From: Prasinococcaceae sp. CCMP 1430
Lineage: Eukaryota; Plantae; Prasinodermophyta
Direction of reading: 5' to 3'
Assembly: GCA_013416795.1 (NCBI GenBank)
Contig: RQSC01000619.1
Coordinates: forward strand, 9,824 to 61,977
DNA: 52,154 bases
Both the position numbers and the translations under genes were made by a program. This document shows positions 25,597 through 31,773 of the stretch, in pieces (the stretch's first letter is position 1; every line of letters begins with the position of its first letter). The notes beneath the pieces are model-generated. The model was given only the letters and a program-made list of their open reading frames with translations, ran no database searches and was not told the origin of the DNA.

Positions 25597-26430
25597 ATGC
25601 GGCGCGTGCCCGGAGCGCTGTGGCGCGCGGCGGCCGAGCCGGCCAATGGGGCGCACGTAGGCGCGGGCGCCGCGGCGGCGGCAGCAGCGGTGACGGCGGC
25701 AGCGACAGAGGCGGCCGCTGCAGGCGCTGGCGCTGGCGCCCGCGCCTACGGCAGCAGCAAAGGGACGCGTGGGCATGGACGTGCCTCGGGTAGCGGCGGC
25801 AACGTACGCCGGCGCAAGCGCCCTGAGCGCAGTTTGGCGGGCGACGGCAGCCGCGCTGGGGGTGCCACTGCAGGCGGGGGCTTTGCGAGCGCGGGCACGC
25901 CGGAGTGGCGCTACCGCGACATGGACGCTGCGTCGTTGGCGGCAACGCGCGAGGCGACGAGCGCTTACACACGCCGGCTGGGTTCGCGGCTGCGCGACTG
26001 CTTGGAGGCTGCGTGCGCGGAGCATCCCCAGTTGTGCGACGAGCTCGTAGAGCGCATGGGTTTTGCAGTGAACTCGGTGCGCGTGACGCGCGACGGATCG
26101 CGTGCCTATGTGCACTGGAGCGTCGACCCCGGCGGCGAGGAGCGTGCACGCGCGCTTTTGAGTGCTGCTCGGCCCTATCTTCGCCGCTACTGCCAGGATT
26201 CGCTCGACCGTCGCCGTGCGATCGAGCTGGACGTGCTCACGCTTGCGCCTAGTGCGCAGAGCAGCGCGATGGGGGCACTGCTCGATAGCGTCGACGCCGA
26301 CAGGCGGCGCAGAGAATCGCACCCACCCGCGCCCGTCACTTGGGCCACTGCGGCGGACGTCGTCGTCGAGTCTGTGGACGGTATGGACGGGCGACGAGGC
26401 GGGAGCGGTGCGCCAGGCGGCAGTGCGTGA
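25597..26430 (+). CDS. rbfA: RbfA-domain ribosome-binding factor A homolog, organelle-targeted
   Basis: RRLGSRLRDCLE...FAVNSVRVTRDGSRAYVHWSV...LLSAARPYLRRYCQDSLDRRRAIEL follows the RbfA KH-like pattern. The Arg/Ala N-terminus resembles a targeting peptide. Confidence 0.7.
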   Translation: MRRVPGALWRAAAEPANGAHVGAGAAAAAAAVTAAATEAAAAGAGAGARAYGSSKGTRGHGRASGSGGNVRRRKRPERSLAGDGSRAGGATAGGGFASAGTPEWRYRDMDAASLAATREATSAYTRRLGSRLRDCLEAACAEHPQLCDELVERMGFAVNSVRVTRDGSRAYVHWSVDPGGEERARALLSAARPYLRRYCQDSLDRRRAIELDVLTLAPSAQSSAMGALLDSVDADRRRRESHPPAPVTWATAADVVVESVDGMDGRRGGSGAPGGSA

Positions 26431-26714: not shown

Positions 26715-28854
26715 TCACCGACACGAAACGGGGCAGTTGAGCAGCGTCGCCTTTTCGATGTCGTAGTCAAAGCGTGGCGTGAGGTCAATGCCGCAGTAGG
26801 GGGCGTTCTTCGGGAACAGCGAATCTGCTGGCTCTGCCAGGCCGAAGAGCTCCTTGTCGATGATGGCAGCCTTGTTGACCGCGTGGATGATCGCTTTACG
26901 CACTGCCAGCTCGTTCGTGGGGGGCTTGGCCGTGTTGAGGATCACGATGCGGTTCTGCAGGGGCTGGGTGAGGTAGGTCTGGAACTCGGCCAAGTGTTGG
27001 GTCATGAACTCGGCGACGGCCGCAGGCTCCAGCACGCCGTCGCCGATGACAGCGTCGAGGGACCCGTCGAGGAGCGCGCTCCGGACGTCCTCATGGCTGT
27101 CGTAGCGGACGAGACGAATAGCATCCACCACCTCGCCGCTGCCGGCATCCCAATGGTCGGCGTTGCGCGTGAAGACTACCTCCTGGACGGGATATTCGCC
27201 CTCCTCATCAGGTACGGAGCCCAGCACGGTCTCGTCCGGCTCGTAGATCCATCGTCCTGTTCCCGAGATGCCGAGGGTCCCTGCCGCGCGCGCACCAGTA
27301 AGCGCGGGTCAGCCATAGCACTGTACGCACCGGTGTTGGACATTGCTGAGGCGAGGCGGGGTCACACAGCTGTGCCGGCTGGCGGGCGCGCGGTGCGGGA
27401 GGCGCGGTTTTCTCATCCTATTGGCACACCTGCGCAGGTGATGTTCACGCCGTCGGCGGCCACAGTCCCCCACGCCGTCGGACACGAATTCTGTGCGATG
27501 GGGTCGCTGTCGAGCCCCGCCACGAACATGGCCGGTGAGAGCATGCGGAGCGGGCGAATGAAGGACAGCTCCTGCAGGAGGGGGTAGTACTTGCTCTTGG
27601 TGGTCACGACGAACGTGTGGTCGCCTTCGCAGCTCCATCCGTCGATCGCTCCGGGGAGGCCGTACCAGCCGTGGTAGTCGCCGGTGGTGAGAGGCGCGGC
27701 GAGCACGTGGTCGAAGTTAAGCTTGGCGGCGGCGCAGTCCCAGGGGGTGCCATCGTGGAAGGTGACGTTCTGACGGAGCATAAAGGTGTACTGCTGCCCG
27801 CCAGAGCTGAGGTCTTCGACGATCCACGAGACCGCGAGGGAGGGGAGGATGGCGCCGCCTGGGCCGTACTCGACCAAGCCCTCGTATACCCAATTGTTTG
27901 CAAAGAACTCATTGGGCCGGTACGAGTGGGCGTCGAGCCTCCCCACGCCAGCGAAGAGGCCCGTCTGCCCGCCGGGCGCGAGGGTCATGTTCCTCCCGCC
28001 AGAAAGCACGCGCAGCGTGTGGACCGGGTAGTCGAACTGCTGCTGGCCAGGGGTGTAGCCTGTGAGGCGTCGGTTGATCACTGCCGGGATGCGCTTGCCG
28101 GAGATGGGAAGCTGCGGGCGGCGCGTCAGCGCGGATAATAATGGCCTGGCGCCTGGAGCGCGCCGATACTGGCGGCGCCAGGCGACGCGAGCATTGGAGC
28201 GCTTCACGCGAGTCCCCCCCCGGCCATCCACACACCTCAGTAGCCTGGTCGTGTAGCATGTTGAGGATATCAGTCCACCCAGCTTGGCGCGCAGCCTCGT
28301 CCTCGATGGTGAGGACGTCCGCGATCTTCTGGTCCAAGACCTGGACGCGCGCGCGAGCAGACGCGGCGATGGCAATGGATGCACGCGCGGGCAGACGCGA
28401 GCGCTGTCAGCAGCTGGTTTGCAGAGGCTGGCGCGAGGGGCCATCCTCTAGGACGATGGCGCACCTCCTTGGTGTTCGGCGGGGGCAGGCCGTTCAGGGC
28501 AGAAAAGTACGCCTCGTCGGGTGTGGACCAGGAGGCTGCGTATGAGTGGGGGTCGTACGGCGGGCCCCAGGTCTCCGAGAAGGCCATGTTGAAGTCGCCC
28601 GCCACCATCGCCTCGTTGAAGTCTTCCTTCAGCAGCTCACGCAGGGTCACATTGACCCCGATCTTCGCGAGGTCGGCGCGGATGTCGTCCTCCAGCACGA
28701 GCAGGTTGGCCTCTCCCTCGAGCACGATGAAGTCGACAGAGAGCTCGCGGCACGCTCCCACCGCCTGCTCGAGGCCAACCAGCGCTGCGCGGCCCAGCGG
28801 GGCCGTGGCTGCCGCCAGTGCGAGGCAGGCCGTGGTAGCAGCTCCCACCGTCAT
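26715..28854 (-). CDS. nikA: Circularly permuted NikA-like nickel/metallophore solute-binding protein (SBP family 5), about 580 aa; 4 exons
   Basis: Exons 28854-28465, 28340-28236, 28111-27430 and 27280-26715, all GT-AG and in frame; start context GCCACCATG. Motifs ETWGPPYDPHSY, GRLDAHSYRPNEFFANNWVYEGLV, YYPLLQELSFIRPLR and LNTAKPPTNELAVRKA. Confidence 0.92.
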
Positions 28855-29405: not shown

Positions 29406-31773
29406 TCATGCGAGCGGGTTGCAGTTGCACACGAGCGCGCGCAGCCCGAGAGCGAGGAAACTGCCCATGCACAGGCCAATAGTCAGGAACAGCGCCATGA
29501 GCCCTCCTCCCTCGTCCCGAAGCGGCGGCGACAGCCTCTGCGGCGCGTGCATCATCGCTACGGCGCCGAGGTGGCCATTGGTGATCGCCATGACGATGAC
29601 GAATACCACAGGGTACGCCGGCTGACCAAAGAGAACGGGCAGGACGCCGCCGTCGCCACCGCCAGCGGTGTCAACTGCGCACAAAAGGAAGAGTGGGATA
29701 AACCCCAGGCGCAGAGCGGCCAGTGCGAGCAGCCACAGGTCGGACGGCGCCTTCTTCGGCCACACGCCTGCTATGAAGCGGCCGAGCGTGTCACCCACGT
29801 TGAAGAGCACGAACATGACAGGAGTGAACATATCACCCGTGATGCGCGGGTCGATAGTCGTCTGCGAGGTCCCAATGGAGGCCACAACGCCTGGAAAGAC
29901 GCTCAACGTCACCACGAAGACCGCCCACGCCGTGCAGGCCGGCGCGCCGAGCCTTCGCACAATGGCCCGCGTGCGCACCCCATTGGTCGCAAGCGCCAGC
30001 GGGGCCACGTCGGCGTTCGCCGACACGTCAAGAGCCTGGCCCCAGCCCACGCCGACACGGAGACGCCTCTCATCATATGCTGACTCACCGGCGTCACCGC
30101 GCCAACTCCGCCAGCTCCGTGGTGACCGGTGCGAGGGTGGCGGTGGCGTATCCAGGGGGCCGTCATCCGAGGGAGTGTCCGTTTCCCACGGGCCGATGCC
30201 ATGCCCCTGGCTATGCTTTGACACGCGCGGCCCGCCGCGCGCGAGCGCGATCGCGGCACTCGTGTCTGAATCGTCGTCGCCCTCATCACTCAGCAGCAAT
30301 GCCTCCAGATCGTCATGGCCGCGGCGCGTGCTTCCCAAGAGCGAGCGACTCCGCCGGGGGACCCCGCGAGTGCTCGCCGTGCGCTTCACGAAGCGCATGA
30401 AGCGCCCCCCCATCCACATGCTGTCCCTCTCCATTGCTGCACTCGTCGAGAGCTCGTCGGACAACGACGCCGCGGAAGACTGCGACGCCATTGAATCCTG
30501 GTGACGCAAGTCAGCCACCCGCCCGCGCGCCGAAGCTGGCCCTGCCGATGCCCCGTTGACATCCATGGGCACAGAGCCCGAGCGCGGCCTGCCCGCACCC
30601 CATTGCCTGCCGCCGGTGCCATTGGCCCCACCTGGCGTGCCCTCGTGAGTTACCGCCCCCTCATCCTCGCTGAGTTGAGTCGAGATTGCTCTGCTACGCT
30701 GTGCGTTCTTCCTCGCGTGGTAGTGCGCGTACGGCAGCAGCGCCAGGCCCGCGAACCCGAGGATGCCCAGCCCGATGACGCCAACCGCAACGACGAAGTA
30801 CATGAATGCGGGGCCTCGTACGTCCTCGATGGTCGGCACCACGTGTGAGGGCGGCCTCAGCCACGACGTAGACGCGGCGGTGACGCTCACCGTCAGCCCT
30901 GCTATCCCCTGCCCCCCCATGAGCGCCTGCGTGTACTTGGGAGGAAAACGCGATGCCAGCCCGAAGACGCCGCCCTGGAGAAGCGCCGTCGCAGTGCCCG
31001 CCAGGACGAGCATGGCCGAGATAGTGTAGAAGAGACTCTCTGGCGACAGCGCGTCGGTTTTGATGAAGTACGCCGTCATCCCGAACAAGAAGACATTCAT
31101 GGCGAGCGGAAAGAGCACGCGCACACTCTCGCGCCATATTGGGCCGTACGTGCCTCTCAGCAGCATCCTACGACGCGCGCGCGCGAGGGAGTGAGTGTGT
31201 GTGTGGTGGTGGTGGTGGGGGAGAAGACGGAAGAGGGGGGCGACAGAAGGGGGGCAAAGAGTTCCGAAGAGCGCCCGCGAAGCCATGCGGGCGGGGTTGG
31301 AGCCGGATGTGTTCGAGACGCGCCATCCGGCGGACAGGCACGATCATGTTGCCATGTCAGCTATCTGGACGTGTCGGCGATTGGCTCTGTGACAGCGCTC
31401 GTGCTGTGCGCGGCAGCTGCAACAGCGTGCGCGCGAATGGGCGCGAGTGCGGTGCTTAGTGCTGCGTCACCGCAGAGCGTTGCGGCGCGGGGGTGGATTT
31501 GGGTGGGGGCCGCAGGACTCACCATCGCTGCGTCTGCGGGAAGAGCGTGAAAAGCCCGAGCACGAGCGTGTTGGCCGTCGTGAACGTGACCGCAAAGAGG
31601 TCCTCGAAGTTGGTCGCGTGCGGCGAGCCTTTGAAGCGCACGTAGAAGTACGACGACGCGTTGATGAACGCGTTCCATGGAAAGAGCATGCAGATGCCCA
31701 TGACGGTGAAGATGACGTACACCGCGTACAGCGTGTCCTCGGGCTCCGCCACGAGCCCATCGGCGCCGCCCAT
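29406..31773 (-). CDS. Equilibrative nucleoside transporter (SLC29/ENT) with long central loop; 2 exons
   Basis: Exon 1 is 31773-31523 (alternative ATG 31818) with PEDTLYAVYVIFTVMGICMLFPWNAFINASSYF. Exon 2 is 31167-29406 with QGGVFGLASRFP, TQALMGGQGIAG, VTLSVFPG, FNVGDTLGR and TNGHLG. Confidence 0.88.

What the first reader, a model, noticed from the sequence alone, without database searches (positions are those of the whole stretch)
26715..28854. Circularly permuted, secreted-type eukaryotic NikA nickel/metallophore-binding protein
Seen: the spliced protein starts with what is the C-terminal third of bacterial NikA. DDIRADLAKIGVNV...ETWGPPYDPHSY...LDQKIADVL...RQAGWTDILNMLHDQATELPIS...DYPVHTLRV corresponds to NikA EIIQADMRQIG...RTWGAPYDPHAF...IDKEIGEVL...RQALYRDILTRLHDEAVYLPIS. 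After a short LSGG link (about 27990-28005) it continues with the NikA N-terminus (GRLDAHSYRPNEFFANNWVYEGLV vs GPLNPHLYTPNQMFAQSMVYEPLV) and stops at YDIEKATLLNCP (vs YDPQKAKALL). It has 3 spliceosomal introns, a signal-like N-terminus, 4 N-glycosylation sequons (NVT, NMT, NVT, NIT) and added cysteines, including one near each new terminus (GACREL and LLNCP). Established: NikA is the periplasmic SBP of bacterial NikABCDE and binds Ni with a metallophore through aromatic/Arg residues and His416. Inference from my by-eye alignment to E. coli NikA recalled from memory: Y22, W100, R137, W398 and Y402 equivalents are kept, His416 becomes Glu (PDEAY), and the terminal cysteines may staple the opened loop. 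No NikBCDE permease is in the window. This suggests a eukaryotic extracellular Ni or other metal scavenger (e.g. supplying urease) working with an unknown uptake partner. I know of no description of this permutation.
Basis: partly seen in the sequence, partly recalled or inferred. Interest (0 to 1): 0.9.

Follow-up and report, generated by a model that had tools for sequence, protein, structure and literature searches.

The report
Permuted NikA-like algal metal-binding protein
This spliced nuclear gene of a marine alga encodes a secreted relative of the bacterial nickel-binding protein NikA whose chain order is truly circularly permuted. It belongs to the ZCRP-B family, already known from diatoms as a cell-surface protein induced by zinc/cobalt scarcity, and the permutation appears not to have been reported for that family.

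Summary
A four-exon, GT-AG-spliced gene on the minus strand (28854..26715) encodes a 580-aa family-5 solute-binding protein. Its parts run "NikA 340-480, then NikA 1-155, then NikA 155-320".

The order is shared by at least 123 full-length homologues from marine algae (Chloropicon, Pycnococcus, Triparma, Aureococcus, diatoms, Symbiodinium). These form one clade (support 100/100). Their sisters are canonical-order, eukaryote-looking relatives. All 40 bacterial loci examined have the normal order.

The cut removes a 13-16-residue hairpin. It is flanked by two cysteines (C35, C575) found only in the permuted clade. NikA's ligand cage is invariant, but the nickel-ligating His416 is Glu in 94% of members.

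The interpretation needs correcting. This family is ZCRP-B (Kellogg et al. 2022), which is plasma-membrane localised in diatoms and induced by low Zn/Co. Zn/Co (probably as a chelate) is therefore a better guess than Ni, and "a eukaryotic NikA without NikBCDE" is not new.

Three things do seem unreported:
- the permutation itself;
- natural tandem "intermediate" forms, including one in a close relative;
- green-algal, anchor-less members such as this one.

The terminal disulfide could not be tested.

The parts
26715..28854 (-). Whole coding region of the permuted NikA-like (ZCRP-B family) gene: 4 exons, 580 aa
   Evidence: Searches give the splice model. One search shows collinearity with homologues across all junctions.
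28465..28854 (-). Exon 1 (aa 1-130). It holds the signal-like peptide, C35 and the first part of the old C-terminal third (TWGPPYDPH, PDEAY).
   Evidence: Pfam SBP_bac_5 profile positions 308-366. Equivalent to NikA 344-~420.
28774..28854 (-). Signal-like, Ala-rich hydrophobic N-terminus (about aa 1-27)
   Evidence: Kyte-Doolittle 12-residue means are 1.4-1.9 over residues 1-20. The equivalent residues 1-28 of P0005 have pLDDT below 50. No SignalP was run.
28750..28752 (-). Codon of Cys35, at the new N-terminus of the fold
   Evidence: Cys in 95% of 123 permuted proteins and in none of 41 canonical-order proteins.
28513..28515 (-). Codon of Glu114, the position of NikA His416
   Evidence: Alignment to E. 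coli NikA. Glu in 116 of 123 family members.
28341..28464 (-). Intron 1 (124 nt, GT..AG)
   Evidence: Absent from the related contig L004 at this junction.
28236..28340 (-). Exon 2 (aa 131-165), a helical part of the old C-terminal third
28112..28235 (-). Intron 2 (124 nt, GT..AG)
   Evidence: Absent from L004.
27430..28111 (-). Exon 3 (aa 166-392). It holds the end of the old C-terminus, the junction and the old N-terminal part (NikA 1-155).
   Evidence: Residues 55-206 of the exon match NikA 11-155, E 1e-26. Pfam profile positions 3-91.
27995..28006 (-). LSGG (aa 201-204), the join of the old C-terminus to the old N-terminus
   Evidence: One search gives the position. The family consensus ...QQFDYPxHxLxVxSGSxTVTVAPGAQTGLFxxVGRLDPH spans the join.
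27554..27556 (-). Codon of Arg351, the position of NikA Arg137 (carboxylate-binding arginine)
   Evidence: Invariant in 123 of 123 members. Mapping.
27281..27429 (-). Intron 3 (149 nt, GT..AG)
   Evidence: Homologues P0013, P0004 and P0331 are gap-free across the junction.
26715..27280 (-). Exon 4 (aa 393-580 plus stop). It is the middle part of NikA (about 155-320) and ends ...YDIEKATLLNC-PVSCR*.
   Evidence: Pfam profile positions 129-270. NikA 148-317.
26733..26735 (-). Codon of Cys575, at the new C-terminus of the fold (LLNC)
   Evidence: Cys in 98% of permuted proteins. Asp/Glu, never Cys, in 41 canonical-order proteins.

Best explanation
The gene encodes a secreted, soluble member of the ZCRP-B family.

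Shown:
- ZCRP-B proteins are eukaryotic (algal) descendants of a NikA/CntA-type family-5 solute-binding protein.
- The chain has been circularly permuted. The old C- and N-termini in lobe I are fused through a short linker.
- The chain is opened in lobe II by deleting the 13-16-residue 'EAGW...REKDG' hairpin.

Inferred:
- The two new ends each carry a clade-specific cysteine and are probably disulfide-linked.
- The protein still closes like a Venus flytrap on a small metal-chelate complex. It would hold the complex with the retained NikA cage: Tyr229, Phe234, His312, Trp314, Arg351, Trp96 and Tyr100. Glu114 replaces the Ni-ligating His416.
- By homology with the diatom proteins, the physiological cargo is most likely Zn(II)/Co(II). 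The protein would act outside the plasma membrane as a high-affinity capture step, handing the metal to a separate importer such as a ZIP.
- Anchored relatives may instead be internalised. This copy has no membrane anchor, so it must be retained by the wall or periplasm or by a partner.
- The permutation most likely arose once, by tandem duplication followed by loss of the outer halves.

My confidence by part:
- Permuted SBP5 and ZCRP-B family membership: about 0.95.
- Extracellular metal(-chelate) binder: about 0.7.
- Zn/Co rather than Ni: about 0.5-0.6.
For: Architecture.

Fold. The AlphaFold2 model of the 60%-identical Chloropicon homologue is one compact fold (pLDDT 88.7, pTM 0.86). Its residues 203-579 superpose on E. 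coli NikA 2-326 (Z 25.9, rmsd 2.4 A, 315 residues). NikA and then CntA are the best Foldseek matches.

Family and single origin.
- 123 permuted and 41 canonical proteins were classified.
- The permuted set is one side of a branch, at 100/100 support and in 100% of bootstrap trees.
- All 40 prokaryotic loci are canonical.

ZCRP-B link. The published T. pseudonana ZCRP-B sequence shows the same order. Eight of its 12-mers occur in the window protein in the same order, with 74 of 96 identities. Diatom members sit in the same clade.

Function in diatoms. ZCRP-B is induced at low Zn/Co, localises to the cell membrane by YFP tagging, and has no NikB/C partner.

Other evidence.
- Site conservation.
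- Cut point and clade-specific cysteines.
- Tandem forms.
- Ordinary eukaryotic neighbours, with no nikBCDE.
Against: No metal binding has been measured for any family member. Overexpressing ZCRP-B in P. tricornutum did not raise 57Co uptake.

The Zn/Co link comes from diatoms at about 45% identity. It may not transfer to this lineage. Earlier unchecked notes on this genome report urease and a LarC-like nickel gene, so a nickel demand exists.

This copy lacks the C-terminal membrane anchor of most relatives. How a soluble binder would stay at the cell is unexplained.

The disulfide and the exact pocket geometry were not tested. The modelled protein is a homologue, not the window protein.
Confidence: 0.6

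Rival explanations
1. One reading: an extracellular nickel or nickel-metallophore scavenger that supplies urease and other Ni enzymes.
For: The closest solved relatives by sequence and fold are Ni-binding NikA proteins, then CntA. The NikA cage residues Y22, W100, R137, W398 and Y402 are 95-100% conserved. Earlier unchecked notes report urease and a LarC-like gene in this genome. Ni was apparently not among the metals varied in the diatom work.
Against: His416 is Glu in 94% of members, and Arg97 is Trp/Tyr. A PDB entry title calls His416 essential for nickel uptake in E. coli (3qim). The characterised orthologues respond to Zn and Co.
Confidence: 0.2
2. A binder of a non-metal small molecule (a peptide, an amino-acid derivative or an opine-like compound), used for nutrient capture or sensing. 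The Zn/Co response of the diatom proteins would then be indirect.
For: SBP5 is a broad family. Peptide-, glutathione-, opine- and sialic-acid-binding proteins also match the fold at Z of about 20-21. A chain deposited as a 'peptide-binding protein' (9pl3) is among the best sequence matches.
Against: The residues conserved are specifically those of NikA's metal-chelate pocket. The top matches are NikA and CntA, well above the peptide binders (Z 25-26 against 20-21). One family member is fused to a Peripla_BP_2 domain, a metal-chelate/B12-type binder.
Confidence: 0.15
3. An artefact or decaying fragment: a mis-joined gene model, a remnant of two tandem NikA genes, or bacterial contamination.
For: A close relative does carry tandem units. 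Prokaryote-style gene callers split this locus into three ORFs.
Against: The ATG has an upstream stop. The introns are in frame and canonical. Collinearity with 123 homologues includes a transcript. The same locus is 98.75% identical over 5.6 kb in a Tara metagenome, with the same neighbours. The neighbours are eukaryotic genes. There is only one copy in the window.
Confidence: 0.02

Closest known systems
ZCRP-B (Zn/Co Responsive Protein B) of marine diatoms (Kellogg et al. 2022, Nat Commun, PMC9010474; T. pseudonana XP_002297477.1, P. tricornutum XP_002183815.1)
   Same: Same protein family and the same permuted order. It has the same junction motif (QQ[FY]DYPxH...APG..TGLF..VG..D.H.Y.PNEFF) and the same terminal motifs (C..L.F... 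and YD.EKA..L.C). It is extracellular and lacks NikBCDE partners.
   Different: Identity to Thalassiosira-type members is about 45%. The window protein ends 5 residues after the LLNC cysteine and has no C-terminal transmembrane helix or cytosolic tail. It falls in a subclade with Triparma, Pycnococcus and Chloropicon, not with diatoms. No expression or metal data exist for it. The paper treats ZCRP-B as a collinear NikA homologue and does not mention a permutation.
E. coli / Brucella NikA, periplasmic Ni-(L-His)2 binding protein of the NikABCDE ABC importer (PDB 1uiu, 3dp8, 4oer)
   Same: Same two-lobe SBP5 fold (Z 25.9 over 315 residues). Sequence identity over the aligned parts is about 28-35%. 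The pocket residues Y22, H98, W100, R137, W398 and Y402 are conserved.
   Different: The chain order is circularly permuted. The hairpin at about NikA 320-340 is deleted. His416 is Glu, Arg97 is Trp/Tyr and Met27 is Phe. The protein has eukaryotic introns, a signal peptide, sequons and extra cysteines. There is no ABC permease.
Staphylococcus aureus CntA (Opp1A), staphylopine-metal (Ni/Co/Zn) binding SBP5 (PDB 5yh5, 5yh8, 5yhe)
   Same: It is the next-best structural and sequence match (Z 25). It binds a metal-chelate rather than a free ion and serves Zn/Co/Ni uptake, which fits the Zn/Co biology of ZCRP-B.
   Different: It has the canonical order, is a bacterial lipoprotein and works with an ABC permease. 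Identity is only about 22-28%. No opine-metallophore genes were looked for or seen here.
ISIP2a / phytotransferrin of marine algae
   Same: A functional analogy only: a cell-surface metal-capturing protein of phytoplankton that works without a dedicated ABC permease. Kellogg et al. proposed it as the model for ZCRP-B.
   Different: An unrelated fold and sequence. It binds Fe(III)-carbonate and is membrane-anchored and endocytosed, whereas the window protein has no anchor.

Membership tests
SBP_bac_5 / cluster C solute-binding proteins (NikA-type) | Significant match to the Pfam PF00496 profile and to solved NikA sequences | tested here: met
   Exons 3 and 4 score 49 and 70 bits (cut-off 32.4). 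Exon 3 against NikA gives E 1e-26. P0005 against NikA gives E 5e-58.
SBP_bac_5 / cluster C solute-binding proteins (NikA-type) | Canonical N-to-C order of the fold elements (lobe Ia/Ib, then lobe II, then return to lobe I) | tested here: not met
   The order is NikA 344-477, then 6-153, then 148-317. A sequential structural alignment covers only model residues 203-579.
SBP_bac_5 / cluster C solute-binding proteins (NikA-type) | Two-lobe SBP5 three-dimensional fold | tested here: met
   The AF2 model of homologue P0005 has pTM 0.86. It matches NikA at Z 25.9, rmsd 2.4 A. The first 170 residues were matched by sequence only.
NikA proper (Ni-(His)2 receptor of NikABCDE) | His416 ligand to nickel | tested here: not met
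   Glu114 in the window protein. Glu in 116 of 123 family members.
NikA proper (Ni-(His)2 receptor of NikABCDE) | Genetic or functional coupling to the NikBCDE ABC permease | tested here: not met
   The ten neighbouring ORFs over about 16.9-40 kb of the window gave ENT transporter, RbfA-like, EF-hand, Vps36, epimerase, ATG7, desaturase and glycosyltransferase hits, and two gave no Pfam hit. No ABC components were found. The rest of the genome was not searched.
NikA proper (Ni-(His)2 receptor of NikABCDE) | Aromatic/Arg pocket (Y22, W100, R137, W398, Y402) | tested here: met
   Y229, W314, R351, W96 and Y100 are 95-100% conserved in 123 members.
ZCRP-B | Sequence homology and shared architecture with the published diatom ZCRP-B proteins | tested here: met
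   The T. pseudonana ZCRP-B sequence in the paper's supplement has the same order of parts. Eight of its 12-mers map in order with 74 of 96 identities. The window protein and diatom proteins share one 100/100-supported clade. The exact T. pseudonana and P. tricornutum entries were not among the proteins returned.
ZCRP-B | Induction by Zn/Co scarcity | not testable with these tools
   No expression data for this organism are available here. Shown only for diatoms.
ZCRP-B | Tethering to or location at the plasma membrane | tested here: not met
   The window protein stops 5 residues after LLNC and has no hydrophobic tail. Most relatives have a C-terminal TM helix or a GPI-like end. An extracellular location is inferred from the signal-like N-terminus only.
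Natural circular permutant arisen by duplication and deletion | Existence of tandem-duplicated relatives whose middle equals the permuted unit | tested here: met
   M-to-C read-through in one ORF occurs in P0018, P0040, P0108, P0256 and P0185. L003 overlaps the 3' end of L004 at 100% over 306 nt, then enters a second unit that is 95.8% identical to the first. Whether these forms are ancestral or secondary is not resolved.

The most novel reading that the evidence does not exclude
The whole ZCRP-B family, an emerging ocean biomarker of zinc stress, is an unrecognised natural circular permutant of NikA.

It would have arisen once in eukaryotes from a canonical-order, already eukaryotic ancestor, through tandem duplication. 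'Living intermediates' (multi-unit chains) still exist, one of them in a close relative of this organism.

The permutation moved both chain ends from lobe I to the far side of lobe II, where a new disulfide closes the cut. That made it possible to hang the binding protein on a membrane anchor or to concatenate it. The result would be an ABC-independent way of capturing trace metals at the algal cell surface.
Probability: 0.45. Interest if true: 0.7.

Novelty: new member of a known kind. Interest (0 to 1): 0.55.

Why it matters
ZCRP-B is used as a protein biomarker of Zn/Co stress in the ocean. Its about 30% similarity to bacterial NikA confounds metaproteomic assignment. One field study concluded that all its 'ZCRP-B' hits were bacterial.

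The permuted order gives a simple, architecture-based discriminator. The markers are the junction across the old termini, the LLNC end and the N-terminal Cys. None of the 40 bacterial loci or 41 canonical proteins examined has these features.

For protein evolution, this family is a large natural example of a circular permutation in a two-lobe binding protein. Canonical sisters, tandem forms and single permuted units are all extant.

For algal physiology, the finding extends the family to green algae and to anchor-less soluble forms. It also gives concrete residues to mutate: Glu114, Arg351, Cys35 and Cys575.

Tried and rejected
- Whole-protein searches with the window's own spliced protein were not possible, because it has no reference. 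I used exon references, an ORF reference with a region and the 60%-identical Chloropicon protein P0005 as a proxy for the representative search, the fold and the fold search.
- The C35-C575 disulfide could not be tested. Model coordinates are not exposed, so only conservation and clade-specificity were measured.
- I looked for the published T. pseudonana and P. tricornutum ZCRP-B entries among the returned proteins. Neither was in the top 120, so the link rests on the sequence printed in the paper's supplement.
- The prokaryotic genome scan found only canonical-order genes. It was seeded by two peptide patterns, so it is not exhaustive.
- Gene-model artefact and contamination were considered and rejected.
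- A second copy or a continuation of the gene in the window was sought by tblastn. None was found.
- Literature searches for a permuted solute-binding protein in eukaryotes found nothing relevant. The library holds open-access papers only.
Full report
**1. What is in the sequence**

On the minus strand an ATG at 28854 opens a four-exon gene. A stop lies three codons upstream of the ATG. The exons are 28854-28465, 28340-28236, 28111-27430 and 27280-26715. The three introns are GT..AG and measure 124, 124 and 149 nt. The 1743-nt CDS gives 580 aa.

The model is not just a frame-keeping exercise. The spliced protein aligns end to end with Chloropicon (60%), Pycnococcus (63%) and Triparma (63-64%) proteins and with an MMETSP transcript (64%). 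The first two exon junctions are gap-free in all of them. The third is gap-free in P0013, P0004 and P0331, while P0005 and P0007 have a short insertion just after it.

A Tara Oceans contig (L001) is 98.75% identical over 5.6 kb and has the same neighbours. A contig from a relative with 85% aa identity (L004) lacks introns 1 and 2 at the predicted junctions. The window holds one copy only.

**2. The permutation is real**

- Pfam SBP_bac_5 matches exon 1 at profile positions 308-366, exon 3 at 3-91 and exon 4 at 129-270.
- Exon 3 residues 55-206 align to NikA residues 11-155, E 1e-26.
- The full-length Chloropicon homologue P0005 gives three HSPs against Brucella and E. coli NikA in swapped order: residues 218-372 match NikA 6-153, residues 400-575 match NikA 148-317, and residues 42-180 match NikA 344-477.
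- An AlphaFold2 model of P0005, built on a 46-sequence alignment, is one confident compact fold (pLDDT 88.7, pTM 0.86).
- Sequential structure aligners cover only its last two thirds. Model residues 203-579 superpose on NikA 2-326 (Z 25.9, rmsd 2.4 A, 315 residues). Foldseek aligns about 390 columns at TMq 0.46. That is what a permutant should give.

**3. Where the chain was cut and rejoined**

The old C-terminus (..QQFDYPVHTLRV) is joined through LSGG (aa 201-204, 28006-27995) to the old N-terminus (..TLAPGGQTGLFAGVGRLDAHSY).

I re-ordered the permuted proteins for alignment only. The new C-terminal Cys575 (LLNC) then falls on the Asp/Glu of the bacterial 'LL(D/E)EAGW' motif. Cys35 falls on the Gly of '(K/R)DG'. 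The 13-16 residues between these two points in typical canonical proteins, a hairpin in lobe II, are absent here.

Cys35 is present in 95% and Cys575 in 98% of 123 permuted proteins. Neither column holds a Cys in any of 41 canonical-order proteins.

In proteins such as P0005 the mature chain has six cysteines. Four of them form two local, invariant pairs of positions (C294/C329 and C378/C394). By elimination the terminal pair is the remaining possible disulfide.

**4. Family, distribution and origin**

A search of 1.84 billion representative proteins with P0005 splits cleanly. Collinear single-stretch hits have at least about 45% identity. Three-stretch hits have 28-40% identity. Classifying 365 retrieved proteins by the order of three segments gave 123 complete C-N-M (permuted) proteins and 41 complete N-M-C (canonical) proteins.

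Named permuted members come from Chlorophyta (Chloropicon, Pycnococcus), Bolidophyceae (Triparma), Pelagophyceae (Aureococcus), diatoms (Thalassiosira, Skeletonema, Bacillariaceae, Coscinodiscus) and a dinoflagellate (Symbiodinium natans, annotated 'nikA').

In a maximum-likelihood tree (90 rows, 530 columns, LG+C20) the permuted proteins are one side of a branch. Support is 100/100, and the split appears in 100% of bootstrap trees.

Their nearest neighbours are canonical-order proteins that look eukaryotic. P0133 and P0139 have a signal peptide, sequons and a C-terminal hydrophobic anchor. P0154 has a Cys-rich tail. Both types sit on single-gene contigs of about 2 kb. The remaining 36 canonical proteins lie across a 100-supported branch.

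A pattern-seeded scan of 185,579 prokaryotic species genomes returned 40 loci, mostly Bacillota, at 29-35% identity. None had the permuted order: 38 were N-M-C, and in 2 the middle segment was not detected.

One origin of the permutation, within eukaryotes, is the simplest reading. The root is not proven.

**5. Tandem forms**

Five proteins from different subclades run from the end of one unit straight into the next. The joins have the form ...LLNC-x(2-11)-C-...(D/E)F(I/V).

- P0018, P0040, P0108, P0256 and P0185 show this. P0040 lies on a 2-kb ENA contig on which its ORF ends inside the second unit.
- The most telling case is a close relative of this organism. L003 is 100% identical to the last 306 nt of L004, which encodes signal peptide-C-N-M. 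L003 then continues 'LLNC-AD-CRELSLDFIVLD...' into a second unit that is 95.8% identical in DNA to the first.

Such chains are what the duplication-deletion model of circular permutation predicts as intermediates. They may equally be secondary concatenations.

The window gene ends 'LLNC-PVS-CR-stop', which resembles the start of a next unit ('CRELS'). With only two residues to go on, this is a speculation.

**6. What it binds and how it probably works**

The E. coli NikA pocket residues were mapped through the alignment and counted in 123 members:

| NikA residue | Window residue | Conservation in family |
|---|---|---|
| Y22 | Y229 | 100% |
| M27 | F234 | 100% |
| H98 | H312 | 100% |
| W100 | W314 | 100% |
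| R137 | R351 | 100% |
| W398 | W96 | 95% |
| Y402 | Y100 | 100% |
| R97 | Y311 | replaced: Trp or Tyr in 83% |
| H416 | E114 | replaced: Glu in 94% |

From established knowledge, NikA binds Ni as a chelate. Arg137 holds a carboxylate and His416 is the single protein ligand. A PDB entry title calls His416 essential for Ni uptake (3qim). CntA, the next-best match, binds staphylopine complexes of Ni, Co and Zn.

The retained cage therefore argues for a metal-chelate ligand. The His-to-Glu change argues against NikA-type nickel binding.

**7. It is a known family**

Kellogg et al. 2022 (PMC9010474) named the diatom proteins ZCRP-B.
- A YFP fusion localises to the cell membrane.
- No NikB/C homologues were detected.
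- The authors propose a surface-tethered high-affinity Zn/Co ligand that feeds ZIP transporters or is endocytosed like ISIP2a.
- Overexpression did not raise 57Co uptake.

The T. pseudonana sequence printed in their supplement has the same order of parts and a C-terminal TM helix. Eight of its 12-mers map in order onto the window protein, with 74 of 96 identities.

Their alignment treats the first 200 or so residues as an N-terminal extension relative to NikA. The word stem 'permut' occurs nowhere in that paper or in the two later preprints that mention ZCRP-B. They reported homologues only in diatoms, dinoflagellates and prymnesiophytes.

**8. How the window protein differs from the characterised ones**

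It ends five residues after Cys575, as the Chloropicon and Pycnococcus proteins do. Most stramenopile and other members instead carry a TM helix, and many of those share a cytosolic motif (R/K)EKxGxPxFxPL. A few end in GPI-like hydrophobic tails. The window protein is therefore predicted to be soluble and secreted. How it stays near the cell, and which importer takes the metal, are open.

Its neighbours are ordinary nuclear genes: an ENT nucleoside transporter, RbfA-like, EF-hand, Vps36, epimerase and ATG7. No ABC, ZIP or COG0523 gene lies close by.

**9. Verdict**

- Right: it is a permuted, secreted NikA descendant without a permease, and the permutation seems undescribed.
- Wrong or incomplete: the family is already known and experimentally tied to Zn/Co rather than Ni.

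The gene is a new member (green-type, anchor-less) of a known kind. The permutation, its clade-specific cysteine pair, its single origin and the tandem forms are, as far as the searchable literature shows, new observations about that kind.

Noticed in passing
L003:1-504 and L004:1-1951 (Tara contigs of a relative with about 85% aa identity): The relative's gene does not stop after LLNC. It runs on ('LLNC-AD-CRELSLDF...') into a second permuted unit that is 95.8% identical in DNA to the first, so it encodes at least two tandem units. L004 also lacks introns 1 and 2 but keeps intron 3.
   Followed up: partly
window 26715-26735 (-): The C-terminal tail 'C-PVS-CR-stop' resembles the start of a next unit ('C...CRELS' in the tandem relative and at the window protein's own N-terminus). 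It may be a vestige of a lost second unit. Only two residues support this.
   Followed up: partly
P0123 (1037 aa, metagenomic): A permuted SBP5 unit (residues 22-564) is fused to a Peripla_BP_2 domain (PF01497, residues 602-881). That is the siderophore/B12/haem-type binding fold, so two different metal-chelate binders sit in one chain.
   Followed up: no
C-terminal tails of P0016, P0023, P0029, P0041, P0058, P0061, P0109, P0121, P0126, P0173 and others: Many TM-anchored family members share a short cytosolic motif just after the helix, (R/K)EKxGxPxFxPL. It might be a sorting or endocytosis signal. Diatom-type tails differ, for example ...K..LE..L....EGAV.A.
   Followed up: no
P0133, P0139 (L002); P0154 (L046); P0178, P0218, P0221: These are canonical-order, eukaryote-looking NikA relatives and the sister groups of the permuted clade. 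P0133 and P0139 have a C-terminal hydrophobic anchor after the normal C-terminus, and P0154 has a Cys-rich tail. Both ways of tethering an SBP5 protein therefore exist in protists.
   Followed up: partly
PMC9010474, main text versus Supplementary Fig. 1: The paper reports one predicted TM segment near the N-terminus of P. tricornutum ZCRP-B, which is likely the signal peptide. The printed T. pseudonana sequence and most homologues have a clear C-terminal TM helix, which implies a type I orientation.
   Followed up: no
window 29406-31286 (-): Immediately upstream of the gene lies an apparently intronless 626-aa equilibrative nucleoside transporter (PF01733). It has a His-rich N-terminal stretch and a long Gly/Ser/Arg-rich central loop.
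   Followed up: no
window 25597-26430 (+): An ORF with a weak RbfA (ribosome-binding factor A) match (23 bits, below the Pfam cut-off) converges on the 3' end of the gene. It may be an organelle-targeted RbfA.
   Followed up: no
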